A DNA stretch of 64,000 nt from the NCBI RefSeq assembly GCF_023055435.1, contig NW_025963857.1, positions 29,016,001 through 29,080,000 on the forward strand, given 5' to 3'. The notes under the pieces are model-generated. The model was not told the origin of the DNA, did not search any database, and saw only the letters and a list, made by a program, of their open reading frames with translations. Origin of the DNA: Haliotis rufescens. Lineage: Eukaryota. This document shows positions 461-61,262 of the stretch, in pieces (the stretch's first letter is position 1; every line of letters begins with the position of its first letter). A program made the position numbers and the translations under genes.

Positions 461-600
461 TTTTACCTTTACAGATACTGCAACCTTGGTGAGCACACGG
501 GGTATACAGGGACTCACTTCCTGGTTGAGCCCACCCAACACTGATCATGATCACGCAACACGGAGTTGCTGTAGGGGAAGAGGTATGTGATCACGTGACA
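461..600 (-). promoter_or_regulatory. Promoter/first-exon cassette (likely serves a gene left of the window)
   Basis: Donor AAG|GTAAAA (466), ETS CACTTCCTGG 515-524, E-box TGATCACGTGAC 588-599 (other box degenerate); flanks homologous to 38400-39590. Confidence 0.6.
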
Positions 601-1399
601 CATGTAACCTGACGTTATCAGTTTAGAGCTGTCAATAGCGTTGTCACCCTACGGTAGATTATTTATATTGAAATTCCACAAAGATTTATTGCTGTGACCT
701 CGGCCTGATATGGCTGAAATATTGCCGATGTGACGTTAAACTTTAACTCAGTCACTCACTATTGTAACCTGTAATTGAAATGTATGTCAAAACTAAAACA
801 AGTGTCTAGATAAACATAAATCTTTAATGAACATCTCCGCCTTAAGAACGACTAAGCGATTGTGAATGCATAGATGCTAAAACGTTGAATGTAGGAGTTT
901 AAAACTATGATCTACAATGTGCGTTTAAGCTGTATCTAAATGACAGTTAAACATAGGATAACAAATGCGAAAGTTGACACAAATGATCTCATGTGAGCCC
1001 AGATATAAAGTAAATCAATGCTATAAAAATTGTAGATACTTTGATAGGGGGCCTTTAAAGTAAAACAGACGAAAGGTGTAGATTATGTGGATGCTCCAGA
1101 GGAAGGGGTGGGTTGGATGGGGTGGTCTGGGGGTAGTCAAACTGCATACAAATGGATTATTATTTGAGTATGTTGTTGTTGCTATGATATAGCCCTAATA
1201 TCCTTATTGTAAACCCAATCACTCACTCGCTCGAGTTTCTCTGTCAAACAGATGTAAATGGTGGAGTGATCAGCATCTCGCGATACGGGAAATGAGTACT
1301 GAGTGGGTATGCTAAGTTCAATTAACTTGTAAGTCACCAGTAGTATCAAGGAACCACTTTATTGACAAGAGGATACAGTAAAATTATTAATTTTCTAAA

Positions 1400-2688
1400 A
1401 AGAGCAAGATAGACCGGATCCTTGAACAACTTCCACTCATGTTAAGCCACATGATACATAAACCTGATCACCCATTCTAAATGTGTTAACAAACTGTTTT
1501 CAGGGAATATTTTAAAGGAAGTGCATAGCGTAAGATCAACCCAGGAATATTTCGGTCCCGAAGAGACGCAAATGCCGAGAGATATTGGTATGGCGAATAT
1601 GGGCGCTTCGCAGGGCCAACATTTCACGTCCATCCGATGACAGTGGCAGGACTCATGCATCGGTACAACCAGGGAGGACACACCGGGGACAGGCCAAGGA
1701 GTGGTAGACCATGTGTCATGATCCCCCGAGATGACCGCTATCTGTGACCTTTGTATCTTCGCAACCGTTTTCATGACGGTGAGTTTTAGGTCGCAGCATC
1801 AGCCAATACACTGTGACAAGAAGACAACGTGCTGCTGGGATTCGGGCCTACAGACCTTACGGTGGCATGACCCCGACCCAGTCGATGGCAGCGACGTGAT
1901 TGGCAGACGATGCTCGTCAATGATGAGTTAGATCCACCTGTTCAATGCAGATGGAAGAATCCGGGCGAACCGACGAAGAGGAGAGAGATAAGCTACAGGA
2001 TACGTCCAGGAGGAACAGTCCTTTAGTAGGGGAAGCATTATGGTCTGGGGAGATATGCAGTGATATGAAAACATGTCTTGTTATCCATGGAAACCCAAAT
2101 GCCCAGAGCTACAGGGATGAAATCCTTCAACCTGTTCTCACCCCCCTTCTCCGCCAGCAGTTTCAGGGTGTTTGTTCCAGCAATATCATGCTAAGACCAT
2201 ACTGCCCTTCTGACGCAAGATTCCTGGTAATCACGATCTTGGATCCTGACCGGTTTTGCCTTGGCCAGCCCACTCGCCGGATCCATCGTCAACTGAACAC
2301 CACTTGGATCCCTTTGACAGGCAGGTCGGAGAATAGCTCCAGCATCCCACAGCTCTGATTGAGCTTGAACGTGTCCCAGTGGTAAATAGAAGCCAGATCC
2401 AAAATGACAAATGTCAGCAATGAGACGGTGGATGTTTGCCTATCCACTCTTGGATTAATGAACTCGCTAGATTATTTCACATGTAAATTCACTTTATGAC
2501 CCCTCAGTTGTTTACATGCCTTGGACGTTTCTGTATGTAACGTCATCTTGGTTGTTTTCTTTATCACGTTCTCACACAATATTTAGATTATTGTTCAAAT
2601 ATATTGTACATTGTTACCATACGTGTTTTGATTCATTTTCTTACCATTTTAGATGATACTTGGTTTCTTTTGTTCGTCATTTTATATA
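1400..2688 (+). mobile_element. Degenerate Tc1-like transposon
   Basis: Frameshifted remnants (GNPNAQSYRDEILQP; WPAHSPD at ~2262); terminal gtttcttttgttcgtca. Confidence 0.7.
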
Positions 2689-2691
2689 TGT

Positions 2692-2806
2692 AGTGGTTCC
2701 CGGGTTTGATCCCCCAAATTGGTACACTGTGTTTAGCCCATTTCTGTTGTCCCTACCCGTGACATTGCTGGAATATTGCTAAAAACGCCGTAAAACCACA
2801 CTCACT
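2692..2806 (+). mobile_element. 5'-truncated SINE family 1 (duplicated with the unit at ~28465-28581 and ~62155-62270)
   Basis: B box plus body plus actcactc tail. Confidence 0.75.
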
Positions 2807-3095
2807 CTTTGATAACAGAGATACATTAAATGGAAGGGAACAATGAACTTTTCTTGAAAAATAAATTCCCCAATATATACCGTTTTGATACTTAAATCTG
2901 GCCAAGAATCGGCATTCAATATATTATAATTTCATACTTTGACGTTAACACTGTTTCTTTCATGCTGACTGGCTGAAGGGGTAGTCACGTGATCTGATAT
3001 TTGGAGTTCACACATCTGTGAAAGGACAAAAAAAAAGTTCACACGATGTGAACATTTTTGTGTGAAATTGATCGTGTGAACTTTTGCCGGAACTA

Positions 3096-9393: not shown

Positions 9394-11570
9394 CTACACG
9401 ACAGAGTAATGTGTATCTATTTCAGTCAATCCTTCACAAAAGGTGAATACTTTCACATGATCATCGCTGGTAACGTAAAGCAAGCCATCATCATCCAGAC
9501 AGATACCAAGAGGACACTCAAGGCGATCATGTTGTGTGAGAACATCTCTGACAAACTGCCCCGACTCTGTCAACTGAATCACCCTTTTGGTGTCTCTGTC
9601 TACAAGCAGGATATCTCCTGTGCTGCTTGTTGTGACCCCCCAAGGACATTTCAGAGCTTTGTCTCCTGAAGGGGTGTAGGTGAAAACAACTTCACCATCA
9701 CAGGTCGCAGATACCAGGGATTTTACTGCAGCATCACTGAATATCAAGTTGTTATTTCTGGTGACATGAATATAGGATGGGTTCTTTATCACACCTGTGT
9801 TGATAGATTTAAGAACATTCCCTTTCATATCCAGCACGTCAACAGAGGCACGACTGCCGATACCACCTGCTACCAGTTGTGAAGAGTTCAGACAGGCTAA
9901 CCCATAATACTTCCTCTTTGTCTTCACAGTTGACACTTGTGTGGGCTTAGTGTTAAAGCTGATGAAAGCTATTTGTTTTGTGTCTGGCAGAGTAACAGCT
10001 ACCCGAGCTCCACCAACCTTAGCTACTTGCTTTGGACCAGTGGGAAGATCGAGACATTTCTCGAAGAGTCTTTTGTTTGAAGTATAATATGCACGAAGTC
10101 TCCTATAAAAACTGTCTATCACAACAGTTACCTTAATACCATCAACAACTAATACTGCAACATCAAACAAAACCTTTGAAAAAGGCTGAATGCCCCCCTG
10201 TCTGCTATAGTCTATTGTTTTCAGGAGAACAGGAGAAGACGTCCGGTCACACAGACCTCCAACAACCTTGACCTCCCCCAGCTGCACCTCATCCACATAT
10301 CTCCTCAGTTTATCTGTGTCATGTGTGAAGAAAATGGTGGATGGTATTGGTCTCTTGTCCTCACTTGTGTCCTCATCTCTGGATGCTACAGCCACAGTCT
10401 CATATATATCATACATGTCTGCTACACAGTGTGACGTCACGGCTTTGTCTATGAACTCATACCGCTGCTGATGCATCTGGAGCTCAATCTCCTGGAACTT
10501 TCGGTGGGCTTTCCATTCTTCAATACGTATCTTAGTGAGTTGGTCGATACGATCCAGCAGTTTCTTTTCTTTTTTCAGAAGAACGTCTACAGCTGCCATA
10601 CGTACTTTCTGAACTTGGTCTTTCATCTCCCGTGCGTTCGTCGATAGCCTTTCAATTTTCGAATTTGTTGAAGAAATATTATCAGTGTAAGTGTCAATTT
10701 TTTTCTCTTGGTTTCTAGTTTCAGTTATCAGACTTTCTTTTACAAGAGGCGTTATTGTATCTATGGTTTCAACATCATCACACTTCCTGTGTTTGATACT
10801 GCAACATACAGTACAAATTGCCATCCTGCAATCTTTACAAAACAGTTTTATCTTCTCATCCTTGTGAATTCTGCACATAAAGCTTGATGCCATTGGTTTC
10901 TCGTTTCTATGGATACGTAAGTCAATCACTTTATGGTCACGTAACCGTGGTATCTTCTTGTGTAACTGGAGACACCCATCACAGAAGACATCGTCACAAA
11001 TGGTGCACCACATTGTACCTTGAGTTGTCTCCCCATCATCTTTGCACATGCTACAGGTACCTAAACATAAAGCACAGCGTGTTACAAATAATGCAATTTC
11101 TAGAAAACATACTCACATACTACAACTTTTAATACATACTGTATGTTTACGGGCCATAGTTGTTAGGTGTATAAATGTCAATATAAACTTCGAACTCAAT
11201 CCTTCTCACTTTAATAAATATAAAAACTGCATTTCCAATACCTTGGGGTGCAAGACATGAAAACGTTTCAAAATTCTCTACCTGACGATTCCTCCAAATC
11301 GTCCATCAGACTCTGTATAATGTGGTTTGGTTTCAGCTGTCTGACCCACTCCTCTACTGGTCTAGCAGGGTTGGCCACCTTCGTCAGCTGTCTACAGGAG
11401 GGACATGGAATAGACTTGGCTTGAATTGCTTGAGGCTGTGTTTTGGTGTATTTCAGCAAACAGGACTTACAGAAAGTGTGACTACACTGAAGTGTGGCAG
11501 GGTCTGTGAACACTTCTGTACAGATGACACAGGTCAGATGGTTGTCCGTCAATTTCTTTGCGGTAGCCAT
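9394..11570 (-). CDS. TRIM E3 ligase copy A (RING-Bbox-Bbox-coiled coil-NHL-like propeller); join(11570..11282,11060..9394), 651 aa
   Basis: C3HC4 RING (CVIC..CSHTFCKSC..CPSC) in a 289-nt exon; phase-1 GT-AG intron 11281..11061 (TCAG|GTAGAG ... TGTTTAG|GT) joins in frame to B-box1 (CTICDDVFCDGC..H), B-box2 (CRIH..FCKDC..ICTVC..H), coiled coil and repeats such as PWGVTTSSTGDILLVD / PLGICLDDDGLLYVT; acceptor TTTCTTTCCATCAG|AA directly precedes the ATG. Confidence 0.93.
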
Positions 11571-12495
11571 TTCTGATGGAAAGAAATAGTCCGACCTAGC
11601 TATGAGTTTATAAAAATATATTTCATGGTGCTAAGTATCTCCAATGATCTATTCTTGCNNNNNNNNNNNNNNNNNNNNNNNNNNNNNNNNNNNNNNNNNN
11701 NNNNNNNNNNNNNNNNNNNNNNNNNNNNNNNNNNNNNNNNNNNNNNNNNNNNNNNNNNNNNNNNNNNNNNNNNNNNNNNNNNNNNNNNNNNNNNNNNNNN
11801 NNNNNNNNNNNNNNNNNNNNNNNNNNNNNNNNNNNNNNNNNNNNNNNNNNNNNNNNNNNNNNNNNNNNNNNNNNNNNNNNNNNNNNNNNNNNNNNNNNNN
11901 NNNNNNNNNNNNNNNNNNNNNNNNNNNNNNNNNNNNNNNNNNNATACANNNNNNNNNNNNNNNNNNNNNNNNNNNNNNNNNNNNNNNNNNNNNNNNNNNN
12001 NNNNNNNNNNNNNNNNNNNNNNNNNNNNNNNNNNNNNNNNNNNNNNNNNNNNNNNNNNNNNNNNNNNNNNNNNNNNNNNNNNNNNNNNNNNNNNNNNNNN
12101 NNNNNNNNNNNNNNNNNNNNNNNNNGTTCAGCTGCAGGTCCTGTGTCCAGTACAATGGTATATTGATAAAGGGACATAACTCTTATATTCATATACAAAT
12201 TTGCGACGCTTGTATAAACACAGCCACCACTGCATTAATCTGTTCACATTTGGATTCTAGAAACAAACACGTGCGACATATGGTTACGTCGTTTTGAAGA
12301 GACCTAACTGTACATTCAACATCTGTTAACATGTTACACTTATTTCAACCTGCAAGTCAGGCTACTTTCGTTATTGAACTTCAATTTACCATGATGTCGA
12401 CTATATTTCAAATATATGGGTGGTTTTAACAGGAGCCTGTGTGCAATGAATCCGAAAGCAACATATTCCAGTTACATTTTAACAGACATCTATCG

Positions 12496-12632
12496 TGTTA
12501 TCTTCACAGATACGCAACTTGGACGAGCACCCGGGTTAGACTGTTTTTCACTTCCTGGTTGTTGCCTCAGACCACACTGATGATCACGTGACAAGTTCAA
12601 GCCATCGGGGAGAATGTATGTGATCACGTTAC
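12496..12632 (-). promoter_or_regulatory. Proximal cassette of copy A (donor mutated GT>AT)
   Basis: AAG|ATAACA at 12501, ETS 12549-12558, TCACGTGA 12584-12591, second box TCACGTTA 12624-12631. Confidence 0.6.
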
Positions 12633-12999
12633 ACGCGATACCCGTAAACTGTGATACGGTTTCTCAGATCTGTTGTGAGCAGTCAGCAGATATATCATGT
12701 TGTGAGTGTTTATTGTGACGACACATTTTGGAATAACAAATACAATGGTCCCAATACAATGTCATATGTGAAGTACTGTGCGCCATGTTCAAATACTATA
12801 ATATATAAAATACACAGTACAATCAATCATTCAAATTATATTTGCAATGAATCACTTTATAAATAATTGTTTTCTGTTGAAATAAAAAGAATAAACAAGC
12901 TGTTGCTTTGTTCTTAGCATAGAAAATGTCAATTCTAACAACAAGTAAACTGTAGAAATTATACCTTCTTATAATGCGCGCTCCAAGTCAGAAGACATT

Positions 13000-13880: not shown

Positions 13881-14591
13881 AAGTTCAGTTCAGAGTCTAT
13901 GTTACAGTTGTAAGAGTCATACTTGTTATAGATTGACTGCAGTAAATTATATTATGATGTAATACTATCACAATATTAATGTATTAAACTTCACCAAAAA
14001 TATACATTTTTTGACAAAGCCTACCTTTGTTAGATACAATCGACCTGAAACATGTCAATCAACTCACATAACTAAGATTTCGATTAAAAAACCTTTAATT
14101 GTTAAGTAAATAAGTTTGAAAAGCCCTCACAAAGAACGTGTTGCGACATCTGCTTTTAGACCTCGCGCAAAGCGAGCGAATTTTGAATGCATCAAACAGC
14201 TGAGAAAACCATGTAAAATACAGACTAAATACTAAGATACAGATTAAATACTCTACAACCCCAATATAAACACCAGCACCACTGCAGACACTGTTCACAT
14301 GCGGATTTAAGGCGTCACTAGCACGGAAGATATTCAACAGTAGCGTTACGATGTTTTCCAAAGAGAAACTTGTACATTTCACACAGCACACTTATTTCAA
14401 CATTCACACTTATTTCAACATTTACATGTATTTCAACAAAGCCACGACTTGAACATGAAGTACAATTGACGTCATGTCGACTATCATTTCAATCTCGCAA
14501 ATCTATGAGTGTTTTTCAAGAATGATTCGGTGTTTGGAAGAATGATTACGAAAACAAAAGATTCAGGTTATTTTTCAACAGAGAATTAGCG

Positions 14592-14685
14592 TTTTACCTT
14601 TACATACAGCTTCATGCACGACCACCGGGTCAAACAACGTCTGTCTGTCTGGTTGACGCCTCCCACACTGATGATCACGTGACAC
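14592..14685 (-). promoter_or_regulatory. Distal cassette of copy A
   Basis: Intact donor AAG|GTAAAA (14597), TCACGTGA 14675-14682, ETS site lost. Confidence 0.5.
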
Positions 14686-15549
14686 GATATTCAGATAAGC
14701 TGTGAGATGTCATCAGACACATTAGCAATGTCCCGTTTTTTACCACCAGATATTCATTTCCTGCTGAAATATATATACTACTGTACAACTTTGAAAGGAC
14801 TTGTGACCAAACATCTGCAATTCAAACATGTGTCAAAGAACACAATAATTGGCAAACAAAACTTTTAGCTTTTAAAACTTCTCATATGAACACAACACGC
14901 GCGCGCTTCCCTGAAAACTACCTTTTCAGTTATAAGTGTTAATTTAGACGACTGTTAACATTAACCATATACTCCGATGTATGTCTTTGGAATAACGTTA
15001 TGGTAAAAATATCTGAACATGAAAAATACAAATCGAACTTGAAATACAATTGTGCCAACAATCACAAACAATACATGGGATATTTCTTAACGTTCACACG
15101 TTTCTTAAGTCAGATGGTTGTCTGTTAACTTCTTAGTGGTGTCCATTTGTGATGGCAAATCGTCTGATTAAATTATCGGTTCAATACGATATTCTCCAAA
15201 GGAACCTTTATTCGGACATGGTATGCCGATTATGTATTTCTGTTACTTTTAATGTAAAGGATCTGTTAACTGTAACTCTGACAGTCAAACTATTCATATT
15301 CCATTCCATATGTGAGCATAATAAAAGACCATATTATGTTGACCACAATTACCATTACTATTTTAATACCCCATATTCCAGTTGGTATTTCGGTACAGGT
15401 GGTTATTACAANNNNNNNNNNNNNNNNNNNNNNNNNNNNNNNNNNNNNNNNNNNNNNNNNNNNNNNNNNNNNNNNNNNNNNNNNNNNNNNNNNNNNNNNN
15501 NNNNNNNNNNNNNNNNNNNNNNNNNNNNNNNNNNNNNNNNNNNNNNNNG

Positions 15550-35038: not shown

Positions 35039-35992
35039 CGCGAATCTCGTACACAGTGACACAGTTTCTCAGATCTATTGTGAGCAGTCAGCAGATATAT
35101 CATGTTGTGAGAGTTTATTGTGACGAAACACTATTGGAATAACAAATACAATGCTCCCAACACAACGTCATATGTGAAGTACTGTGCGCCGTGTTCAAAT
35201 ACTATAATATATGAAATACACAGAACACAGTACAGTAAATCATGAATCATTCAAATTATATTTGAAATGAATCATTTTATAAATATATTCGTTTTCTGTT
35301 GAAATAAACAGAATAAATAAGCTGTTGTGTTGTTCTTAGCAGAGAAAATGTCAATTCTAACAACAAGAAAACTGTAGAAATTATATCTTGCCATCATGCC
35401 CCAAGTCAGAAGACATTTGTCATTATGCACATGAGATCAAAGTTCGGTTCAGAGTCTATGTTACAGTTGTAAGAGGCATACGTGTTAAAGATTGACTGCA
35501 GTAAAAAAGAAAGTTAGTGAATATAGAGCACGGTATAAGGATATTTTACAATGTAATCACAATATTAATATATTAAACTTCAACAATAAAGAATTTTGAC
35601 AAAGCCTTCATTGTTTTAATACAACCGAGGTAAAAAATGTTAGTCAACTCACATAACTAAGATTTCGATTAAATAACCTTTAATTGTTAAGTAAATAAGT
35701 TTGAAAAGCCCTCACAAAGAACGTGTTGCGACATCTGCTGTTAGACCTCGAGTTTTGAATGCAGCAAACAGCTGAGAAAGCTATGTATAAATACAGACTA
35801 AGTACTAAAATACAGATTGAATAACGTGACTGAATATTGCAGAAAGTGCTGATGATAAGTTAATTATTATATACACATAATACTCCTCAGCAAATAACAT
35901 AACTCATATCGTGTGTAGACCATCTGCTCCTTCAAATCAACCACCCACATGGCAGATAGACAGGCGACATACTTCATAATCAAACCGTACCA

Positions 35993-38880: not shown

Positions 38881-39017
38881 TTTTACCTTTTCAGATACTG
38901 CAACATGGACGAGCACCCGGGGTAGAGAGGGATTCACTTCCTGGTTGAGTCCACCCAACACTGATGATCTAGGATACGAAGTTGCTATGAGGGAAGGAGG
39001 TACGTGATCACGTGACA
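38881..39017 (-). promoter_or_regulatory. Second cassette upstream of copy C
   Basis: Donor AAG|GTAAAA (38886), ETS 38935-38944, TCACGTGA 39008-39015. Confidence 0.6.
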
Positions 39018-39192
39018 CTCTGTAGCCGAGGTTATCAGTTGTGACCTGTCAATAGTGTTGTCACCCTGCGATAGAGTAGTTATATTGCAATTACACAGAG
39101 AAGATTTGCGGCCAACCTGTTATTGAAACCTATGTCAAATCTAAAACAATTTACAAATAAATCCAATCTTTAATGAACGTCGTGGCGTCAGG

Positions 39193-39348: not shown

Positions 39349-40174
39349 CGTGGCGTAAGGAACAACTACGCGATCGTTAATGCACAAAGTGCTTAAACCT
39401 TGAGTTAACTGTAAGTGACTTTAAACTCATTATCTACAATCAGCTTTTAAGTGGTATCTAAGCGACAGGAGAAATAAGAGAAACTGCAAAAGCTGACATA
39501 AATGATGTGCTGTGAACATAGGTATAAATTAAAGCAATGATATAAAAAAAATAGATACTTAAGTAGTTGACGTTAGAGATTGATATATCCGTGTCATGTC
39601 TGGTGCTAGACTAACATCTAGTCTCTGAAATGAACATATTTTACAGAAAAAACACTTGTTAAATTATAGCTATGAAATATAATAAAAAGGAGCCCCAGAG
39701 ACTTTCTTCATTATCCTGATACTGCAGTGATCTAGACTTGCCATACATTATAATGTTGCATGAGCTGTATATATTTGTTTCAGGGTCTGTATGACAGACT
39801 AGTCTGGTGCAAGTGAAGCTGGACACTGTAAACAGTCAACAGTCGACGACTGCTATGATATATATCACCTGTTGTAATTTCAAAACAGACAGACATACAG
39901 TTTTATTCAATATAATGGGCCATTGACCAAAAGTACAATTGATACTACAACAGGATAGTTTCCAACGTGAATATACAGACGGTATCACAAACATATGAGA
40001 GAAACAAAATTATAGTTACATTGTATTTCAAAGACCTGATAGTACATTTCACATGATACACTTCTTTAATACAAATTCAAGTCAGGACTTGTGATATTGA
40101 ATTTTCAAGCTTCTTTCCTTTACTTTGATGCCGACTATATCTAAAATCTATGAACTTTTGTTTATGATCTAATG

Positions 40175-40310
40175 TTTCACCTTTACAGATACGGCAACAT
40201 GGACGAGAACACGGGACAGACAGCATCTCACTTCCTGAGTTAGGCCACCCAACACTGATAATCAAGTCACACGATGTTACTTGGCGTGAATGTATGCGGT
40301 CACGTGACAT
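40175..40310 (-). promoter_or_regulatory. Third cassette upstream of copy C
   Basis: Donor AAG|GTGAAA (40180), CACTTCCTG 40229-40237, perfect GTCACGTGAC 40299-40308. Confidence 0.6.
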
Positions 40311-41699
40311 ACTACCCCAATCAACTGTGAGCTGTCAGCAGATTATCATGTTGTGAGAGTTTATTTTGAAGAAACAAAATTGGAATGAGAAGTACATTGC
40401 TTCCTCCGCACCTCATTTGTGAAATTGATTTTGTGCCATGTTTATAAGATACTTTGTTTGGAATACGCATTAAAACATTTGCAATGTTCTATTATATAAC
40501 ACATGCAAAATATTCGTTTCTTGTTGCAATACATAGACTACAAACTTTACATAACACAGTTAAGACAGGACCTGTCACCTTACATCTGTATATGTTTAAC
40601 CTATGTTGAAATAAATACATACTTGACATGTCAAATAGACACTGACCTTTAATTACCTTCTTATATTTAGCAACATCACCGTTTTAAGAATAACTAAACA
40701 CATGCTTCAACTTGGAATTAATTATAAATGAACTAAAAACATAATCTGTCATCTGCGTTTAAGTGGTATCTTTACGACAGTTAAACATAGAAAAATAAAG
40801 GCAAAAGCTGACACTACTGATGTGATGTAAGTATTGATATACATTGAAGCAATAAGCTAAAATAATAGAGATACTTTAATAAGGTTCTTTAACGTGAGAT
40901 CGACGGTAGGTGTTGATATATCTTTGTGTTACGTCGTGCACGAGTGAAGCTTGAAACTAAATCGTTATTGATACTGTATGACCGTGTCCGATAAATGGAA
41001 TACTAGTATATATAGAGTAGACAAACTATCCTCGTGTCGTTTGGAATTTGTAAACAGTAGAAGTCATTGTCTTGGGTTAAAAAGTACATCTGACCAGTTT
41101 CAGTGGCAAAGTGATGAGTGTGTCATTTGATTTTTATGTCACTGTAACCAATGACGTCAGAATAGTTTCAAGAAATTCAATGATGCAATTTCATTGTAGC
41201 CATATTTCCTGGGAGATATCTCTTGATCTTCTCAGTGCTTAGCTATGCGATAATGTGACTGCCGCGATCTCCATCGCATACATTTCTCAAGTGATACACT
41301 GTATGAAAATGCAACTGTCACGATCTTCATGGCATATGTTTATTAAGTGATTCACTGTATCTAATGCAACTGTCGATATTGTATACATTATCCCTGGGGT
41401 TCAGTTTTACTGTAGCTGACACTATCACCATCATTTATTATTTCCCCCAGTGATTCACAATGAACATTAGCCATGCTGTCATGACATCCATGGAAAGCCG
41501 TTTACAGACAATCACCGACACATCCGGTATAGCACGTTTACTGACCCTACCTCCTGTTTTCATCGGTGCTTGGAGTATGCGATCTGTTGTTATTGGGACG
41601 CATGAGTGTGCATTTTGTCACAATATTCTGTTATTGTTTGCACCAAGTTGTTGTGATCTGCCATATGAGTGAATGTTCATACCGATTGTGATCCACTCG

Positions 41700-47881: not shown

Positions 47882-49193
47882 TCACCTTTTAAACAAAAAG
47901 GAAAAATTAAATATGCCCGAACGATTCTTAACATCACCAAGGTTTAGGTTATTCAGTGTCAAAAATATTTCCTCATTCTGTCTGAATGAGATCCTGTGTC
48001 GGGTCGGTCTCTTTACATCCTTTTTCAATATTTTAATTTGATCTGTAGATGTAATATCTGCTTGCTTATATAGGGCATACATATCTTCATCGCAGTCTGA
48101 TGTAACAGCATTGGTTGTGATCTTTATCTGTTGTTGGTACATCTGAAGGTCAATCTCCTCTGATTGGATGAACCTGTTCCAGTTTTTAACATTGTCCTCC
48201 TCGAATCTGTCAACCTGGTCGAGTAGGAGTTGTTCTTTCCTCATAAGATAATGCACAGCTTCCCTGCGAACTTTTTGTATTTCACATCTCACAGAACTGG
48301 CATTTTCCGTTATCTTTTTTATTGAAGATTCTGCAGATGAAATATTGTCAGTTTTGAGTTTCATTTTGTCCTTCAGCTTCATTGTTTCTTTGGTCATGTG
48401 TTCTTTCACTAGTGTGGCCATACTATCTATGGTAACAACATCATCACATTTCCTGTGGTTTATGCTGCAGCATAAAGTACAAATTGGAATAGTACAGTCT
48501 TTACAAAAGAGCTCTATCTGTTTGTCTCTGTGGATTTTACACATGAAATGTCGTTTGCATTTTCCTTGGCCCTTCTTAGATAAATCTACCACTTCGTGAT
48601 CACTAGACAATGACATATTCCTGTGTACCTTGAGGCATCTATCACAGAAGCTGTCAGAACAAGTGGCACACCAGGACGTAGCAGGAGTAATCTCCCCTTC
48701 TCTTTTGCAAACCATGCAGCAATCAATACCTATATAGCACAAAATGAATATCTGAAAGTACTGTAATAACGTCTACGAGAGAAAGAGGAATATATACCAA
48801 TGCTTTTCAAACCCTTTCCTTCATTAGGTCAAACGTTACAATGTAGGTATATTAGAGATAATTGCAATGAAAAGGATATAAAGAATCCTACGGTAGTATA
48901 CCTCGGGCCTCTTCTCCAAAGTCGTCCATTAGCCCCTGTATGACGTGGCTTGGTTTCAGCTGACTGATCCATTCCTCTACTGGACTATCAGGGATGGCAA
49001 CCTTCGTCATTTGTCTACAGGAGGGACATCGGATGGACTTAGCTTGCGTTGCTTCAGTCTGTGTTTTGGTGTATTTCAGAAGACAGCACTTACAGAATGT
49101 ATGATTACACTGAAGTGTGGCAGGGTCTCTGAACACCTCCGTGCAAATGCCACAGGTGAGGTGGTTGTCTGTCAGCTTCTTAGCTGTGGCCAT
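47882..49193 (-). CDS. TRIM copy D (RING-Bbox-Bbox-coiled coil, no NHL domain); join(49193..48902,48729..47882), 379 aa
   Basis: 292-nt RING exon very similar to A/B/C, 172-bp GT-AG intron, open but much more divergent B-box/coiled-coil exon ending GDVKNRSGIFNFSFLFKR*. Confidence 0.8.
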
Positions 49194-49712
49194 TTCTGAT
49201 GGAAAGAAATTAACTGATTAGGCTATAACTTCAATACAAGTTTGTTCAAAAAATATTTTTGTTGTGGCATAAGCCCTAGTTCTGTTATTTTAAATATTGT
49301 CTCCATCATTTATTAATTTAATAGTCACCCCTTCCAAAAGGTAATGCTTGCTGACATCATAATTACCTTAAACAATACAGCAAATAAATCAAATCAATTT
49401 TATTCCTATTTTAATCTTGATCGATGAACTTAATGTGTTATTACAATGGCATCTCACAGATTTGTGTTGTATGCAATGGTTTACTTTGTCTTGGCCATTG
49501 TATCAGCTTTGTTCTTTTTGCAAAAGAAAGCTAGCAGCCGGTTACAGTTACACTGACATATTTGGACGGTATGACTATGTTACTTTTCTCCTTGAATATC
49601 ACTGTCTAATAATATAACATGTTACATATCATTATTAACGCTCATCTACACATTTCACAGAATCATAATAAACGTTTCGTGAAGTGATCCTATGATCTTG
49701 GCTGTACATTAA

Positions 49713-50040: not shown

Positions 50041-53000
50041 AGCTGTTGTAATATTCTGTGACATTTTAGTTTTAAGTATCCTCTGAGTGTACCACTAGGC
50101 TACAGACGCGCCGATAAATCACAATGCTTTTAAAGAATGTCTTTTTCATGTAAATGGATTATAAATATCAAAATATCATTTGCTTGGTAGTAGTAACATA
50201 TTTTAAGGGGATTTATTTGCTATAAATACATATTTTGGTGATTATCTGGTTCTCTTACATACCCCTATACACACCTCCGTGTCATTTCAGTTCCGTACCA
50301 CATACCTTTATTACATTAACAATTGATAACTGAACAAGAAAACATAGGTTGCTAGAAAAAAAATCGATTCCTCAAAATGTATTCACAACATTGAGATGAT
50401 GACGGTATACCACAAATCATCAACGAAAATATTTATAAGATTCGAACGAATAACATTGTATGTGGAAATTTGTAAAGGAAATCTCTCGATGAAAGCTATC
50501 GTTTACTGATTGGAAATTGTAATGTAATAAATATTTTGGGTGGTAAATTACCCTAATGAGGTATATATATTCAGGTTTATAGGAATGTCACTCCCACACA
50601 ATTACATTTATGTTATTCCAGCGCATACTTTGTACTCAGCAACATCTTTTTACAGTAGTTGATGAGATTGTATATCTTCTTTTTTTTCTGAACGAGCTTT
50701 GAATATTAAAGCTTGTTAGTTGTATAACGCGACACTAAGCAATATTCCACCTCGATGACGCGGGTAGAGTTATCCTTCTTGTTTGAAACAGTTCTCGTGT
50801 TCATACGCCAATATGAACCTTCGAGAGGGGCACGATTCTATATTCGGCATAACTCTAATATGCATATGCATAACTCACAAATACGTGATATATACAAACT
50901 TATTGATACGTTGTTTTCGGAAGTCAATTCACATATCACACATAGTTCAGCCAGAGACCATAAAACAGAGGGACATCCCTCCAGCCGCGAAACCGTCAGC
51001 GCTACGGCTTGTACTGCGCATCACAGCGGAAACGCGTTCACTGCGGTCATCGTTATCGTCATTTTTTTCTATGCTAAAGGATATATTTTAAAATATATAT
51101 ATATACGCTCATGTATTTCTAAACATTGTCAACATTACAACTGATACTTGTTGGTGCTCTGAAGCATATCGTTGTCATTGTATTCGATGAATGTGTTCAC
51201 GCTTTGTCTTAGTCTGAGTGAGCAATAATGGCGCACATGTAAAATCGTCAAAAGTGCAGACTGTGCTTTTCTATAACTGCCACTAATTCTCAGTGAACGT
51301 CCTTGGTTACCGAGGTGTATAAAAAGAAGATGTGTTAATGATTAGTTTAGTGCCATTAACAAATGGGGCGGTCGCGAAATTTCTGATTTTGACTCCAGAA
51401 ATGCAACTAAATCTGAATGTTTCTGAAATTATTTCTATTATCGGTCCTGAAATAAATATTTTTACATTCAGTCAGATTTACCCTTTTGCTTGGTACCAAA
51501 AATATTTAGGTGTTATTATTTATGATTTCAGTCATATATCTATAGTTAAATTACCATATCGAAGACGACATAACATGCATTTTGTCTGTGATTGTGATCA
51601 AAATATATCTTTTGAAACATTCTACAAAGTTTCTAATTTTTAGTGATATCGGAATTACAGTTTTGAAGATCTGTTTTTATTTTATTTTTACCATTGTATT
51701 CATCATCTCTTTGTAAGTTTAACATACCTATCAACTTTGTTTCAGTTAGGTTTCTATCACATGGCGCACTGAAGAAAACTGTACATATTTAGACGATCAC
51801 TATTTATGTTATTTTCTGTAGATTTTTTCTTTATTAATCATGGCTACAATTAATTTATCTTTTTATACCGTGTTAATATAAATTATAAGCTATATGATGT
51901 GGGTCTAAACACAATCATGATCAAAGTACTACTGACTTTGTGTATTAAGACAACAATGAAATCATCATACAGATAAAAAAAATCCATTGAAATATTTGTA
52001 TAATGAACTTATCTGGTGCCATGCTTGTTGAAGCTATACTGTTATACCCGAAAGACCTAATTATTCGTATTGCTGAACTATTCAAACTATTCGGCTATTA
52101 TTAAATAACGATGATTACAACCGTCGTCTGCAATCGAATTTATGAGTAGCCTCCCTTTAAAAGATTATCTCCTCCGGGAAATCACATGAAAAGCGCAAGC
52201 CCCAAACTGGCATTAACTGAAAACATTTGATTACTTGCGAAGGGCATTCTCGGTCACATCAGAAGTTCATTTAACAACGCTTTTAGTAAATGTTAGATTT
52301 TGATTCATTGCAACTATTAGAATTATTTACTAGTACAGAATTTACATGATATAAAGGCAAATGTTTTTTTCTGGCTAACAGTAAAGCATGTTCACCAGCC
52401 AGTGGACATGCATATCAGCAAGTAAATCTAGCCTGGATTTATTATATGATATGAAACTTATCTGGAGATATTTTTTGTGAACATCGGGAATATGGTTAAC
52501 TGTAACATCTGTCTTGCTTCAGTTTTATGTACAATTCCTGAGTTTACCGAATCGTATTTTTATGTGGAGTTCATTGCAGATTTTGTAACTTTGTTTATTT
52601 ATAATAGTTATACAATTGTATCATAAAATAATACATATTTCTGATATTCTTTAAAATAGAATAAATTGTTTAATTCTTTTGATATTGGATCGGTTATGCT
52701 TTTTTCTAAACATGTCCTCGAAAACCGTTACTGGTAGACAGTCGTCGTGTTTTCTTTTCCGATCTTTTCCTTTGATTGAAACTTTTTTGGAGATATTACC
52801 GACGACTTGTTAGCGGTAACATCGCTGTTATTCTCTTCAGACCAAGAGTCATCCGAAACCAACCCCTGGTAGTAGTGTGCGAATGAGAGATGAGACAAAA
52901 ATCATTGTAATCTGCTAGGAGTCGTCATTTTTTTGGATTTCGCTGGTGGTGATTGAAGCAATATCGGCTAAGGGAATGAACTCTAGCCCCGGATATGATG

Positions 53001-53347
53001 TTATATTGTTTACTTGGCTACCAGAATGGTTAGTTGCGAAAGTCTGTGCTTCTATTGCGCATCTGCAGCGGTACAGGGGGGGGGGGGGGGGGGGGGGGAG
53101 GTGTAACAGTAGGGTGTCGGGGTGTTACATACCAGACCGTAGCTGATGGTTTATGATAAACTGCTTCTTTATGGTCTCTGCTTCAACCTGCTGGACGGGG
53201 TTTTTGCAGTTACTTTCGTTATCGAAGGGCAATTTACCTCAAGTCTAACATATCTCAAATCTATGAGTCGTGTCATCACCTTTACGTGTTGGGTAGACTG
53301 ATTGCGAAAACAGAAGAATCAAGTTATTTTTCAACAGCGACCTAGTG

Positions 53348-53484
53348 TTTTACCTTTACAGATACTGCAACATGGACGAGCACCCGGGGTAGACAACGTC
53401 TTACTTCCCTGTTGTCGCCTCCCTGTATTGATGATCACGTGACATGATCAAGCCGTCGGGGAGAATGCATGTGATCACGTGATA
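53348..53484 (-). promoter_or_regulatory. Proximal cassette of copy D
   Basis: Donor AAG|GTAAAA (53353), ACTTCC core ~53403, TCACGTGA 53435-53442 and 53475-53482. Confidence 0.65.
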
Positions 53485-54600
53485 CGCGTACACTGTGACG
53501 CAGTTTCTCAGATCGATTGTAAGCTATCACATTGACAGAGGATATGTAGAGAAACAAGTTTTGAATTATAACTAGTACACTGCTCCCACTGCAGCTCATA
53601 TGTGAAGTTCGTTCTGAGCCATGTTCAGATAGTATGTAGGAAATATACAGTACACAGTAGAACGAATCATGTAAAGTCAAATTTATTTTGCAGTGCCCCA
53701 TTGTATCACACAATGAAATCGTTTCCTGCTGAAATACATAAACCGACAGACCGACATCAGGTGTTGATATATCTGTGTGTTTTGTATGGTCAGTGATACA
53801 GCATGGTCGTTTTTGCTTAAAAGAACCTCAAAATGCAATGTACATACAATACAGAATGTTATCCTCCAGTCTTTTGATATCAAATATTTCAACACTCGAT
53901 GAGTGCTGTATTTTATATATATTACCCATTGTAATTTTAATACAGCAAAATGAAGGCAAATATATGAAATGTTAACCCCAAACAAAAATTAATTTCACTG
54001 AAGTCTGCCTGTTGTTCAAATGTCGTATGTCATGTCATATTGTATATTAAGTTGTTTTCAACACTGGATCAACAGGAACTTTTTTTCAACACTGGATTCA
54101 CTGGAACCTTTGTTGCTGAGTATATATTTTGTATCTATACTAACCATAGTTGCTGAATGTATAAATGTTTCATAATTTTCCACCTGGCAATCCCCCCCCC
54201 CCCCCCAAATCGTCTGACTAAGATATGGCTTCAATACGAGTGTTTAAAATGAAAACAAATGTGATGGGACTTGGTATCTCCCATGCTCTATTCTCTATTT
54301 CACACGCTGTTTTCAAGTTAACTGTGACGTCAAAAGTCATGATACTCCATGACTTACGGTTTAGGCTTGCTGTGATCTTAATAGATGTTTTCAACGATCA
54401 CTTTACTATTTTGGTCTACCATATCCAGTGGTTATCCCGAGACAGATCAACAATAAGTCCCCGGTTATCGTTATCGTAGTGCAATTTACATTGATGTCGA
54501 CGATATCTTAAATCCATGAGTTGTTTCAACACGATTCGGTGTTGGGTAGAATATACGCGAAAAGAAAAGATTCAAGTTATATTTCATCAATGATCTGGTA

Positions 54601-56884: not shown

Positions 56885-56990
56885 CCCTTGGGTAGACAGT
56901 GACCTCCTGGTTGTGGTCACCTGTCACTGATGATCACGTGATACAAAGTTGCTATGCGAGGAGGAGGTGGTGTGTGATCACCTGACGCAT
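56885..56990 (-). promoter_or_regulatory. Truncated cassette (no donor)
   Basis: gggtagacag..cctcctggttg..cactgatgaTCACGTGA (56934-56941), second box TCACCTGA. Confidence 0.45.
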
Positions 56991-57270
56991 GAAATCTGAC
57001 GTTAACAGCTGGGATCTGTCAACGGTGTTGTCACCCAGCGATACTGTATCTATATTGAATATATACATAGTTATACAACTAAACATATCTATATGAGGTT
57101 ATTTGGTGTTGTTTGGGGTGTGTCTGTGTGCTCACGTAACGCATGAAATCTGACGTTAACAGCTGGGATCTGTCAACAGTGTTCTCACCCAGCATAACTG
57201 TATCTATATTGAAATTATACATAGTTGTACAACTAAACTGATCTACATGAGGTTATTTGAAATTATTTAT

Positions 57271-58342: not shown

Positions 58343-58809
58343 GAACCTGAATAAATGTGTCTGTATATACAGATGGTGCCATAACTTCATAATATGTTTG
58401 TGCTGCAAAGTTTAGAAAACCAAACCTGTCTGTATTGTCTTACGTGTCGACTGCAGATGGTCCGTTTCTTATTTGCTGGCTTCAGAGTGTCCCCTGTCGC
58501 CGTCGTTGAACTGCGGGTTCAAAGTGCTCTCTGATTTGTCGAGGAGATCTTACTTGTAACATTGTTGGAATGCGCAAAACCCAGTCCAACAAACGAACTC
58601 AAGACAAAACGGCCCCAAACACTTGCAAAAACGGCCCAATATCATAACTGTATAACAATATTAAAATAAATTATGAATGAGTGAGTGAGTTGGGTTTAAC
58701 TCGCTGAAAACAACGAGCACGGGTACCTGGTGCTTACAAACCAAGAAACATAATCGAGACAAATCAGCTCGTACTTACGGAGAATAATAAGCCCATAAGA
58801 TCACATGAC

Positions 58810-59370
58810 CTAAGGACAAAATAATAGCAATGATTTATGTTCAACAGCTATGACTTTGTGACAAGGAAGTGACATGAGTGGTGTCACCAGACTTTGAGGC
58901 GCTATAGGACGTTGGTGCACACGAATGTTATCCCTTACGTGTTCCTGAGCACTGAGTTCCGGATTCTCGGCTGGCCAAGTCAGCACCAGCATGCTCCCAT
59001 TCCTTAAAGCAACCACTGGTACACCAGCTGTGCGTGGGCCTGGTGGAATTCAAACCAACGACTAATCTTATGCATCTAGTATATGAGGTGCTGCGGGGTT
59101 GTGGTCGGCACGACGTTCAAATTCATCCTACATATGATCCATGAAGCTGAGATCATAACTTTTAGTTGGCTAAGGCAGTACCCAGGTACGATAAAGAACC
59201 CCTTGCCATACAACGGATGAGGTCTGTCCTGTGGCTGTAGATGGTGCCATCCATACTAATCCACCAGGTTTCACTGTCTATGCTACACTGCTGGTTTGAC
59301 TCAGCAATTTGTAAAATCGAGAATCACCCCGATTCGCTAATGCACATGAAGCCGTACCCACTAAGTTCTT
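58810..59370 (-). mobile_element. Decayed Tc1-like fragments
   Basis: LTWPAENPELSAQEHVRD motif; homology to 41700-42160. Confidence 0.55.
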
Positions 59371-60207
59371 CAACGTAGGCATTTTGGGGTAAGAATTCAT
59401 CCCCACCAACCTATGATTGTTGTGAGAAGCGACATATTGGATCGGGTGGTCAGGCTCGGTGACTTGGTGGACTGCTTCTCATGGTTCCAAACTCCATGGA
59501 TCGATACACATGATCTTTATACCAAGGAGAGCCATCATATAGCTGGAATCACTTGCTGACCGCACATTAAATGTTTGTCATCTGCAGTTATCTTGATGCT
59601 CATCACTGTCCGATGACGTTTTTTTCCTGTAGCTTGCAAACACGATTGCCAACTTTTCACCACTTAATCACCTGCAAGCGATTGTCCTAAACTCAACATT
59701 CATTTAATTATGAACTGAATCTGTGTCTTAAAGCAACGAATATTATCTGACGGTCCTCAATTTACATTTACGTCTGTGACGCATTTGGTGGTGAATGAAG
59801 GCTGACAATGACTGCTTGTTTGGAGTTCTCTCCGGATGCGTTGTTAAACTATCCCTTTCATTTAACAAACTGTTACCAGTGGTTTCTTGGAGCTCTTCGG
59901 CTATTTCTCACGTCATTCATAAGGTCAGTATGGTTCAAAAGCAAGTTATACATTACAGTAATTTACACCTGCCATTAATCAATATTATACTAAAGTGCTT
60001 TATATATTTATACTTTATTCAAAGGTAAATACTTTCACGGATTCAGAGCAGCTGACATACTTAGCTATGTCTTCAGTACGAGTTTATGAAAATATATTTC
60101 ATGGTGCTAAGTATCTCCAATGATCCATTCTTGCAGTGATCATAATAAAACACACACAAACATGCATAATCAAACATACACACACGTACATACTCTCATA
60201 CACACAC

Positions 60208-60288
60208 GTACATACATACATACATACATACATACATACATACATACATACATACATACATACATACATACATACATACATACATACA
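60208..60288 (+). repeat. (TACA)n microsatellite in the intron-1 equivalent
   Basis: Direct observation; the equivalent positions in A/B/C are N-masked. Confidence 0.95.
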
Positions 60289-61126
60289 TGTTGCGTCCCT
60301 TGGGCATGCCAGAAACCTATGATTGTGGGTTCGAATCCGGGTTCGCCCCGATTATGTTTCTAGGTTTGTCAGCACCATACCCGTGCTCGTGGGTTTCACC
60401 GAAGTGGTAAACGTCTGTGACCTGGATCACTTCGGGCTTTCCTCCCACATTAAGCTGACACGCCGTGATATAACTGGAATACTGTTAAAAANNNNNNNNN
60501 NNNNNNNNNNNNNNNNNNNNNNNNNNNNNNNNNNNNNNNNNNNNNNNNNNNNNNNNNNNNNNNNNNNNNNNNNNNNNNNNNNNNNNNNNNNNNNNNNNNN
60601 NNNNNNNNNNNNNNNNNNNNNNNNNNNNNNNNNATATATACAGACACACATACATACATACATGTATACACACACATTTATAAACACATATACATATACA
60701 CACACACAGACACACACACACACCATTTTGATTCCATGTTCAGCTACGGGTCCTGTGTCCAGTACAATGGTCTACTGATAAAGGAACATAACTCTACTAT
60801 TCATGTACAAATGTGCGACGTTAGTATAAACTATCACCACTGCATGACTCTGTTCACACTTGGATCCTAGATCTCACAAACACTTGCGATATATGGTTAC
60901 GTCGTTTTGAAGACACCTAACTGTACATTCAACATATGTTAACATGTTACACTTATTTCAACCTGCAAGTCAGGACTCGAGGAATGTTCAAGCTACTTTC
61001 GTTATTGAACTTCAATTTACCTTGATGTCGACTATATTTCAAATATATGAGTGGTTTTAACACCAGTCTGTGTGCAATGAATCCGAAAACAACATATTCC
61101 AATTGTATTTCAACAGACATCTATTG

Positions 61127-61262
61127 TGTTACCTTTACAGATACGCAACTTGGACGAGCACCCGGGGTAGACTGTTTTTCACTTCCTGGTTGTTGCCTCA
61201 GCTACACTGATGATCACGTGACATGTTTAAGCCATCGGGGAGAATGTATGTGATCACGTGGC
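61127..61262 (-). promoter_or_regulatory. Intact cassette of orphan unit E
   Basis: Donor AAG|GTAACA (61132), ETS 61180-61189, TCACGTGA 61214-61221, TCACGTG 61254-61260. Confidence 0.65.

What the first reader, a model, noticed from the sequence alone, without database searches (positions are those of the whole stretch)
461..61262. Array of at least 11 duplicated 'double E-box + ETS + splice donor' cassettes: multiple alternative promoter/first exons per TRIM gene
Seen: a ~140-bp module recurs at 461, 12496, 14592, 27402, 34900, 38881, 40175, 53348, 54601, 56885 (partial) and 61127. It is always in TRIM orientation and always 5' of a TRIM unit. On the minus strand it reads E-box (G)TCACGTGA(TC), a second E-box 38-40 bp on, CCAGGAAGTG, ~50 nt, then AAG|GTAA. 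Every copy keeps at least one perfect TCACGTGA, and these motifs look better kept than the flanks. All four TRIM ATGs sit 2 nt after a strong acceptor (TTTC..CATCAG|AA ATG), so an upstream non-coding exon is expected. Known: TCACGTGA/GTCACGTGAC is the MiT/TFE (CLEAR)/USF site, GGAAGT is the ETS core, MITF-ETS composites occur in myeloid promoters, and TFEB orthologs drive host-defence genes. Inference: the promoter+exon-1 unit has amplified separately from the coding region (2 for A, 3 for C, 3-4 for D), giving each TRIM a menu of promoters that splice to one acceptor, possibly under MITF/TFEB control.
Basis: partly seen in the sequence, partly recalled or inferred. Interest (0 to 1): 0.85.

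Follow-up and report, generated by a model that had tools for sequence, protein, structure and literature searches.

The report
Shared first exon of abalone TRIM genes
The repeated module is the promoter-proximal, untranslated first exon shared by one tandem cluster of TRIM-NHL genes in red abalone; the surplus copies look mostly like leftovers of gene duplication and loss, and their use as alternative promoters is plausible but unproven.

Summary
Eleven copies of the module lie at the stated coordinates, all on the minus strand. Each carries one or two TCACGTGA boxes, and most also carry CCAGGAAGTG and an AAG|GT donor. All four TRIM ATGs sit 2 nt after a ...catcag acceptor.

The genome is Haliotis rufescens. 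All 31 module hits in 1.33 Gb fall within one 253-kb TRIM-NHL ("wech-like") cluster, all on one strand, so the module is not a transposon.

The module is a real first exon. Residues 1-32 of RefSeq isoform X1 of gene C are exactly the translation of module m34900. The translation runs from an ATG overlapping E-box 2 to donor 34905, joined to the predicted acceptor. In that model E-box 2 and the ETS site therefore lie inside the transcript.

The "menu of promoters" is not shown. The ancestral unit is one module, a RING exon and a big exon. About half the modules are orphans. Two of them lie beside RING-exon relics, one sits on an intron truncated just before its acceptor, and one gene-to-module gap holds a repeat insertion. 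The per-gene module counts are copied by a ~93-kb block duplication.

A second conserved donor (D2) probably serves genes whose first donor is dead. Motifs are better conserved than flanks, but USF, MiT/TFE and other factors cannot be told apart. No RNA data could be reached.

The parts
344..620 (-). Module m461 (461-type lineage). E-box 1 at 591-598; E-box 2 degenerate (TTGCGTGA); ETS GGAAGT at 516-521; D1 AAAG|GTAAAA with first intron base 466; D2 is GC. It is followed just outside the window (about 0.67-1.47 kb left of window position 1) by RING fragments and a truncated big exon.
12384..12654 (-). Module m12496, the proximal module of gene A (canonical lineage). E-box 1 lost (TAACGTGA); E-box 2 at 12584-12591; ETS intact; D1 dead (GAAG|ATAACA); D2 CATG|GTAAAT intact, first intron base about 12389.
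14567..14700 (-). Orphan module m14592. E-box 1 and ETS lost; E-box 2 at 14675-14682; D1 GT at 14597. Longest stem branch in the module tree.
15096..15158 (-). Relic of a RING exon start (degenerate acceptor plus the first 17 codons) lying upstream of m14592.
27291..27561 (-). Module m27402, the proximal module of pseudogene B. E-box 1 lost; E-box 2 at 27490-27497; D1 dead (AT); D2 GT.
34788..35060 (-). Module m34900, the proximal module and exon 1 of gene C. Both E-boxes (34989-34996, 35029-35036); ETS at 34955-34960; D1 at 34905; D2 at about 34793. It encodes residues 1-32 of RefSeq isoform X1.
38768..39037 (-). Orphan module m38881 (sister lineage to the 461-type). E-box 1 at 39008-39015; E-box 2 lost; ETS intact; D1 GT at 38886, with an in-frame stop just before the donor; D2 is GC.
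40151..40330 (-). Orphan module m40175. E-box 1 at 40300-40307; E-box 2 lost; ETS TCAGGAAGTG; D1 AAAG|GTGAAA at 40180; deletion in the D1-D2 interval.
53232..53500 (-). Module m53348, probably gene D's own exon 1. Both E-boxes (53435, 53475); ETS variant GGGAAGTA; D1 GT at 53353; D2 GT.
50928..53163 (.). About 2.2 kb of a dispersed genome-wide repeat inserted in the intron between m53348 and D's RING exon. It accounts for about 2.2 kb of the 4.1-kb distance; roughly 1.9 kb remains, against 0.7-1.1 kb in the canonical unit.
   Evidence: 1,689 first-look candidates on many contigs and both strands, 72-77% identity
54484..54740 (-). Orphan module m54601. Both E-boxes (54678, 54716); ETS intact; D1 is GC (AAAG|GCAAAA, 54606); 10-nt deletion before D1; D2 AAT|GTAAAT.
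56890..57007 (-). Partial module m56885: upstream part plus one E-box (56934), no ETS core and no donor. In a paralogous unit the same lineage is followed by a RING relic (C79:29008963-29009221).
61015..61285 (-). Orphan module m61127 (canonical lineage). E-box 1 flank changed (CCACGTGA); E-box 2 at 61214-61221; ETS, D1 (61132) and D2 intact.
60059..60134 (-). Last stretch of intron-1 homology below m61127. Homology ends about 22 nt before the expected ATG, so the acceptor and all coding exons are missing.
33806..34096 (-). Gene C RING exon (acceptor ...catcag|AA, ATG at 34094).
   Evidence: P0001
31910..33579 (-). Gene C big exon (two B-boxes, coiled coil, NHL), intact. RefSeq 'protein wech-like', 651 or 683 aa.
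11282..11572 (-). Gene A RING exon (ATG at 11570).
9394..11060 (-). Gene A big exon, intact. RefSeq LOC124119653, 651 aa.
24379..26502 (-). Unit B: RING exon (26213-26500, with a zinc-ligand Cys changed to Phe) plus a big exon with an in-frame stop. This is a pseudogene.
47882..49195 (-). Gene D: RING exon (48906-49193) plus a short divergent B-box/coiled-coil exon. RefSeq 379 aa, 'transcription intermediary factor 1-beta-like'. Decayed NHL fragments lie at 46741-47044.

Best explanation
The module is the promoter-proximal region plus the untranslated first exon of the TRIM-NHL paralogues of a single ~253-kb tandem cluster in Haliotis rufescens.

How it works:
- Transcription starts at or upstream of E-box 2. 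This is shown only for one RefSeq model.
- Exon 1 is spliced from donor D1 (AAAG|GTAA), or from a second conserved donor D2 (CAAG|GTAAAT, about 112 nt further on), to the acceptor 2 nt before the RING-exon ATG.
- Two palindromic TCACGTGA E-boxes (sites for bHLH-Zip factors: USF or MiT/TFE) and a CCAGGAAGTG ETS site are the constrained elements. They probably co-regulate the whole cluster. This step is inferred.

How the copies arose:
- The ancestral unit is one module, then 0.7-1.1 kb of intron, then the RING exon, then the big exon.
- The surplus copies are by-products of birth-and-death evolution. Whole units were duplicated, coding exons were then deleted or decayed, and the resulting arrangements were copied again by ~93-kb block duplications.
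- An orphan that is still active would splice to the next RING-exon acceptor by default. Occasional use as an alternative first exon is therefore expected as a side effect, not as a designed menu.
For: 1. Exon identity. Residues 1-32 of P0121 (XP_046338214.2, isoform X1 of gene C) equal the in-frame translation of m34900, from the ATG overlapping E-box 2 up to D1 at 34905, followed by the RING-exon start. Other Haliotis TRIM-NHL models also carry short N-terminal extensions directly before the RING-exon methionine (MAT/MAA), several of them ending in E. This shows the 5' exon plus |AA ATG structure is family-wide.

2. Cluster confinement. All 31 genome-wide hits, and all 11 hits to the composite motif pattern, lie on C79 between 28.898 and 29.151 Mb on the minus strand.

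3. Canonical unit. Eleven modules lie 0.7-1.1 kb upstream of a RING exon. The 461-type and 53348-type lineages each have their own gene elsewhere in the cluster.

4. Relic signs.
- RING relics at 15096-15158 and at C79:29008963.
- m61127's intron is truncated before the acceptor.
- m461's gene is truncated.
- B is a pseudogene.
- m14592 has lost two motifs and has the longest branch in the tree.
- A 2.2-kb dispersed repeat explains part of D's distance to m53348.

5. The same multi-module arrangements recur about 92-94.5 kb away at 95-100% identity, in modules and flanks alike.

6. D2. The D1-D2 interval is conserved across lineages. All five copies with a dead D1 form one clade and keep GT at D2. 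Two of their genes, including A, have open big exons.

7. Constraint. Mean pairwise identity among eight lineages is 0.91 for E-box 1, 0.73 for E-box 2, 0.80 for ETS and 0.92 for the donor. The non-motif core is 0.64, the upstream flank 0.24-0.47 and the intron 0.55.
Against: - No transcript data could be laid on the locus, so orphan activity is untested in either direction.
- RefSeq gives gene C three mRNAs (X1 plus two accessions for X2), and gene C has exactly three modules upstream. This fits real alternative first exons as well as my reading.
- Most orphans keep intact motifs and a GT donor. That is what one would expect if they were still functional, although they are also young.
- No coding relics are detectable after m38881, m40175 or m54601 inside the window, so the claim that they lost their coding exons is an inference from paralogous units.
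- The transcription start site is unknown.
Confidence: 0.6

Rival explanations
1. The promoter plus exon-1 cassettes are functional alternative promoters and first exons. Several of them feed each TRIM acceptor and give differential regulation, in the manner of CYP19A1 or NR3C1 untranslated first exons.
For: - All modules are co-oriented with the genes, and most orphans keep at least one E-box, the ETS site and a GT donor.
- An active orphan would automatically splice to the next acceptor, because the intervening proximal module has no acceptor of its own.
- Gene C has three upstream modules and at least three RefSeq mRNAs.
- A transcript from m38881 would give exactly the X2 protein, because there is an in-frame stop before its donor.
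- Gene A's proximal D1 is dead.
Against: - No transcript evidence was obtainable.
- The X1/X2 difference can arise within m34900. Use of D2 puts a stop after the upstream ATG, and a start site downstream of that ATG would have the same effect.
- D's annotated proteins lack the extension that an m54601-derived transcript would add.
- No isoform carries the extension that m40175 would add.
- Relics and truncations point to decay.
- Comparison between blocks shows no extra conservation of orphans over their flanks.
Confidence: 0.3
2. The module is only a 5'UTR exon. The true promoter lies further upstream, and the E-box and ETS conservation reflects a UTR or downstream-element function, not classical upstream factor sites.
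For: - The X1 model transcribes E-box 2 and the ETS site.
- Homology among several lineages extends at least 250 bp upstream of E-box 1.
Against: - Conservation rises sharply at E-box 1 and is low (0.24-0.47) upstream.
- The TATA-like words about 235 nt upstream are not shared between lineages.
- No conserved RNA structure was found: -0.95 kcal/mol with no covarying pairs.
- Palindromic CACGTG with T/A flanks is a classic DNA-binding site.
Confidence: 0.15
3. The module is part of a transposable element or another dispersed repeat.
For: It has many copies, and short SINE/MITE-like repeats and a mariner copy lie nearby.
Against: All 31 of 31 genome hits are within 253 kb on one contig and one strand, with none elsewhere in 1.33 Gb.
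Confidence: 0.02
4. Part of the copy number is an assembly artefact, such as uncollapsed haplotypes or a mis-scaffolded repeat.
For: D-type units 92 kb apart are 99.8-100% identical over more than 4 kb, and the region contains many gaps.
Against: Eight module lineages differ by 20-30% and cannot be artefacts. Other parts of the same blocks are only 86-92% identical.
Confidence: 0.1

Closest known systems
Genes with several untranslated alternative first exons spliced to one acceptor just upstream of the ATG (CYP19A1/Cyp19, NR3C1, ESR1)
   Same: A non-coding exon 1 with its own promoter and a common acceptor a few nucleotides before the start codon. An E-box bound by USF drives one Cyp19 first-exon promoter (PMC2822775).
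   Different: In those genes the alternative use is shown by transcripts, and the first exons are unrelated in sequence. Here the exons are paralogous copies, only the proximal copy of gene C has annotation support, and many copies look like relics.
Clustered protocadherin and UGT1A variable first exons (my own knowledge)
   Same: A tandem array of homologous first exons, each preceded by a conserved promoter element, all in one orientation upstream of shared downstream exons.
   Different: Those variable exons are coding and give different proteins, and the promoter choice is regulated. Here exon 1 is non-coding and each ancestral unit had its own downstream exons.
Birth-and-death evolution of tandem immune gene families, including lineage-specific TRIM expansions (my own knowledge)
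   Same: Tandem and segmental duplication, pseudogenes, truncated units, a mosaic of old and very recent copies, and a RING exon kept far more similar than the variable C-terminal exon.
   Different: The conspicuous survival of promoter/exon-1 relics at about two per RING exon is not, to my knowledge, usually described.
CLEAR/MiT-TFE and USF target promoters
   Same: GTCACGTGAT matches 9 of 10 positions of the CLEAR consensus GTCACGTGAC (PMC7815692). The site is tandem and lies close to the transcript start.
   Different: Binding is untested. USF2 and TFEB compete for the same motif (PMC12087643), so sequence alone cannot name the factor. No lysosomal or autophagy link is known for these genes.

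Membership tests
Alternative untranslated first exons with a common acceptor (CYP19A1/NR3C1 type) | A non-coding exon 1 splices to an acceptor just upstream of the ATG | tested here: met
   The N-terminus of RefSeq isoform X1 of gene C equals translated m34900 joined at D1 (34905) to the acceptor before ATG 34094. This rests on an annotation model, not on reads.
Alternative untranslated first exons with a common acceptor (CYP19A1/NR3C1 type) | Two or more different first exons are joined to the same acceptor in transcripts | tested here: inconclusive
   At least three mRNAs are annotated for gene C (one X1 and two X2 accessions), but their exon coordinates could not be read. No D or C isoform carries an m54601- or m40175-derived extension.
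Alternative untranslated first exons with a common acceptor (CYP19A1/NR3C1 type) | Each first exon has its own active promoter with distinct regulation | not testable with these tools
   Needs CAGE, ATAC or reporter data.
Transposable element / dispersed repeat | Copies dispersed over the genome in both orientations | tested here: not met
   31 of 31 hits are in one 253-kb interval on one strand. The composite pattern occurs only there.
MiT/TFE (CLEAR) target promoter | GTCACGTGAC-type E-box close to the transcription start | tested here: inconclusive
   GTCACGTGATC is present once or twice per module. The start site is unknown, and the motif fits USF equally well (PMC12087643).
MiT/TFE (CLEAR) target promoter | Occupancy and activation by TFEB, TFE3 or MITF | not testable with these tools
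   Needs ChIP, DAP-seq, EMSA or reporter assays with the abalone factors.
TRIM-NHL proteins (the genes served by the module) | RING, B-box(es), coiled coil and C-terminal NHL repeats | tested here: met
   Pfam finds zf-B_box, ANCHR-like_BBOX and NHL on the big exons. The RING exon was read directly. Precomputed Pfam RING families appear on P0001 and P0002. D lacks the NHL part.

The most novel reading that the evidence does not exclude
The orphan modules are live promoters. Each intact TRIM-NHL gene of the cluster is then transcribed from two to four paralogous first exons, and the whole 253-kb array is switched as one regulon by a bHLH-Zip factor (MiT/TFE or USF) together with an ETS factor. 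That would be a mollusc counterpart of TFEB/HLH-30-driven host defence, acting on a diversified TRIM receptor-like family.
Probability: 0.15. Interest if true: 0.6.

Novelty: new member of a known kind. Interest (0 to 1): 0.3.

Why it matters
The result gives a concrete, testable cis-regulatory grammar for a lineage-specific TRIM-NHL expansion in a commercially and ecologically important mollusc: two palindromic E-boxes, an ETS site and two donors. It also corrects the gene models. The RING exon is exon 2, exon 1 is non-coding, and it has two possible donors. The locus documents how tandem duplication leaves promoter/first-exon relics that can be re-used by downstream genes. It is useful for annotation and for studies of regulatory evolution, but it is not a new kind of system.

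Tried and rejected
I could not fetch orthologous loci from H. cracherodii, H. rubra or H. asinina, or any transcript contigs, so no cross-species footprinting was done.
The right-hand third of the cluster was seen only through the 3-kb loci L004, L008, L010, L014, L019, L027 and L029.

Searches and tests that gave nothing:
- The search for homologous proteins on P0121 residues 1-40 found no other protein with a translated exon 1.
- The RNA-structure explanation for the palindromes was rejected: consensus energy -0.95 kcal/mol with no covariation.
- Block-to-block footprinting of orphans against their flanks was uninformative, because the blocks are 95-100% identical throughout.
- CpG observed/expected in the modules (about 0.7-1.3) is only mildly above background (median 0.74). 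It is not a CpG-island signal.
- The bacterial-type promoter scan is irrelevant to a eukaryote and was ignored.
- Literature searches for abalone TRIM-NHL or wech-like regulation found nothing specific.
- The control column of the genome pattern search showed 11 reverse hits, the same count as the real matches, where chance predicts about 0.04. I take this as a tool quirk and did not rely on it.

Full report
**1. What is in the sequence**

All are on the minus strand, at 70-83% identity (alignment). TCACGTGA occurs 17 times against 1.2 expected. Fourteen occurrences lie in modules and two lie in RING exons, where the motif encodes part of ...KPSHVIQ...; the hit at 2985 was not placed. Because the copies are paralogues, this excess reflects repetition and is not independent evidence.

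In m12496 and m27402 the donor reads AT, and in m54601 it reads GC. All four TRIM ATGs (11570, 26500, 34094, 49193) follow tttc(t)ttyc-atcag|AA.

**2. The genes**

The big open frames carry two B-boxes and NHL repeats. Upstream of each, after an intron of about 240-270 nt, lies a RING exon that starts with the ATG behind the acceptor.

The proteins identify the genome as Haliotis rufescens. Gene C is 'protein wech-like' (651 or 683 aa), gene A is LOC124119653 (651 aa), and gene D is a 379-aa short TRIM. Unit B is a pseudogene, with a stop in the big exon and a lost RING cysteine. The window therefore holds two intact genes, one short gene and one pseudogene, against eleven modules.

**3. The module is a transcribed first exon**

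RefSeq isoform X1 of gene C (P0121, XP_046338214.2) is 32 residues longer than X2 at its N-terminus. Those residues (MSRDHQ...GICKE) are exactly the in-frame translation of m34900, from an ATG that overlaps E-box 2 up to the donor at 34905. They are followed by the RING-exon start.

It also shows that, in that model, E-box 2 and the ETS site lie inside the transcript and not upstream of its start.

Short N-terminal extensions directly before the RING-exon methionine (MAT/MAA), several of them ending in E, occur in other Haliotis TRIM-NHL models, including H. rubra. A 5' exon spliced 2 nt before the ATG is therefore a family-wide gene structure.

**4. It is cluster-specific and not mobile**

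In the 1.33-Gb assembly all 31 hits to the module lie on contig C79 between 28.898 and 29.151 Mb, all on the minus strand. The composite pattern (E-box, 20-50 nt, E-box, 15-45 nt, AGGAAGT) has 11 matches, all in the same interval.

The RING exon, in contrast, is 87-88% identical at the nucleotide level in TRIM clusters on other contigs, while their big exons are only about 55% identical as protein.

**5. Architecture of the cluster**

I joined 130 kb left of the window to the window itself and mapped modules, RING exons and big exons. The recurring unit is module, then 0.7-1.1 kb, then RING exon, then about 240 nt, then big exon. Eleven modules are linked in this way.

A tree of the module core resolves eight well-supported lineages:

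| Lineage | Status |
|---|---|
| Canonical (A, B, C type) | gene-linked, plus the m61127-type orphans |
| 461-type | has its own gene |
| 28898232 | has its own gene |
| 53348-type | D's module |
| 38881-type | orphans only in the sampled DNA |
| 40175-type | orphans only in the sampled DNA |
| 54601-type | orphans only in the sampled DNA |
| 14592-type | orphans only in the sampled DNA |

About half of all modules are orphans. Signs of decay accompany several of them:

- RING-exon relics lie at 15096-15158 and at C79:29008963.
- The intron below m61127 stops about 22 nt before the expected ATG.
- The gene below m461 is truncated.
- m14592 has lost E-box 1 and the ETS site and sits on the longest branch.
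- m56885 is a fragment.

The 4.1 kb between m53348 and D's RING exon contains about 2.2 kb of a dispersed repeat with more than 1,600 first-look candidates genome-wide. m53348 is therefore most simply D's own first exon pushed away by an insertion.

The counts are thus inherited by block duplication and did not arise independently at each gene.

**6. A second donor**

The next ~112 nt are alignable across lineages and end in a second donor, D2 (CAAG|GTAAAT).

The five copies with a dead D1 form one clade, so the change was a single event. All five keep GT at D2. Two of their genes, including A, have open big exons. Gene A therefore probably uses D2 of its own proximal module and need not depend on m14592. 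This is an inference.

Use of D2 in m34900 would place a stop after the upstream ATG and give the X2 protein. The three RefSeq mRNAs of gene C therefore do not by themselves prove use of the distal modules.

**7. Conservation**

Mean pairwise identity among one representative of each of eight lineages:

| Region | Identity |
|---|---|
| E-box 1 | 0.91 |
| E-box 2 | 0.73 |
| ETS | 0.80 |
| D1 | 0.92 |
| Rest of the core | 0.64 |
| Upstream 330 nt | 0.24-0.47 |
| D1-D2 interval | about 0.56 |
| Beyond D2 | about 0.40 |

A site shuffle within the core gave p < 0.0001. The best-kept 10-mer, however, is GATCATCAGT, directly after E-box 2. It contains a TCAGT initiator-like word, a resemblance I note from my own knowledge and did not test.

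This signal comes from the old divergence of lineages that were, or still are, gene-linked. It says nothing about whether the orphans are active now. The young block copies give no power on that question. An RNA-structure explanation for the palindromes is not supported.

**8. Which factor**

GTCACGTGATC matches the CLEAR consensus at 9 of 10 positions (PMC7815692). USF2 binds the same motif and competes with TFEB there (PMC12087643), and USF drives an E-box in one of the alternative Cyp19 first-exon promoters (PMC2822775). Sequence alone cannot choose between USF and MiT/TFE, and other bHLH-Zip factors are not excluded either. The MITF/TFEB idea remains a lead.

**9. Gaps**

The flanks of the intron-1 gaps of A, B and C, and of the gaps at 37789, 60492 and 63394, are collinear in gap-free paralogues. 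The equivalent spans are 125-630 bp. I compared coordinates only and read no letters from the gap-equivalent stretches. The gap at 15412 could not be bridged. None of the gaps touches coding sequence.

**10. Limits**

- No reads, no start sites and no orthologous loci were examined.
- The exon-1 proof rests on one RefSeq model.

**11. Verdict**

The assignment as promoter-proximal first exon is supported. The transposon alternative is refuted.

The headline claim, a menu of alternative promoters per TRIM gene under MITF/TFEB, is untested, and birth-and-death relics partly explain the pattern better. Some default re-use of orphan first exons remains quite possible.

The scan's other notes on this window agree with what I saw: the dead donor of A, the orphan at 61127, and the short chimeric D.

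This is a well-defined regulatory lead in a known kind of architecture, of modest interest.

Noticed in passing
window 2699-2807, 5557-5722, 8641-8813, 28473-28581, 39192-39347, 55067-55234, 55456-55620, 57823-57988, 62162-62270: A short (~110-170 bp) repeat at 82-94% identity, present in both orientations between the TRIM units. It looks like a SINE or MITE.
   Followed up: no
window 3248-4234 (+) and 18985-19557 (-): A mariner/Mos1-type transposase open frame (Pfam Transposase_1, HTH_48) and a DDE_3 endonuclease fragment.
   Followed up: no
RING exons, e.g. window 33806-34110, versus clusters on C379, C434, C179, C585 and C590: The RING exon is 87-88% identical in DNA between clusters whose big exons are only ~55% identical as protein. 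This suggests gene conversion or very strong constraint on the RING exon. Another note of this scan (s1-805634) reports a RING-exon conversion tract elsewhere in the genome.
   Followed up: partly
window 46741-54740 versus C79:28970644-28978670 and 28999453-29007817: D-type units (gene D plus m53348 plus m54601) are 96-100% identical over several kb at distances of about 63 and 92 kb, while neighbouring genes in the same blocks are 86-92% identical. This points to very recent duplication or conversion, or to an assembly duplication.
   Followed up: partly
window, coding exons versus modules: CpG observed/expected is 0.34-0.49 in the TRIM exons, about 0.7-1.3 in the modules, and has a median of 0.74 in the window. 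This is compatible with historical gene-body methylation that spares the 5' ends.
   Followed up: no
window 36934-37493: An internally repeated stretch with self-matches at 79-98% identity and several offsets. It is a tandem array upstream of m34900.
   Followed up: no
window 60136-60410: A microsatellite-like run (repeated ATGTATGT/C units, read as MYVC... in one frame) next to the gap at 60492, inside the truncated intron below m61127.
   Followed up: no
The genome search pattern control: The control (the pattern read backwards) reported 11 reverse-strand matches, the same number as the real matches, where chance predicts about 0.04. This is probably a property of the tool's control for this pattern.
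   Followed up: no
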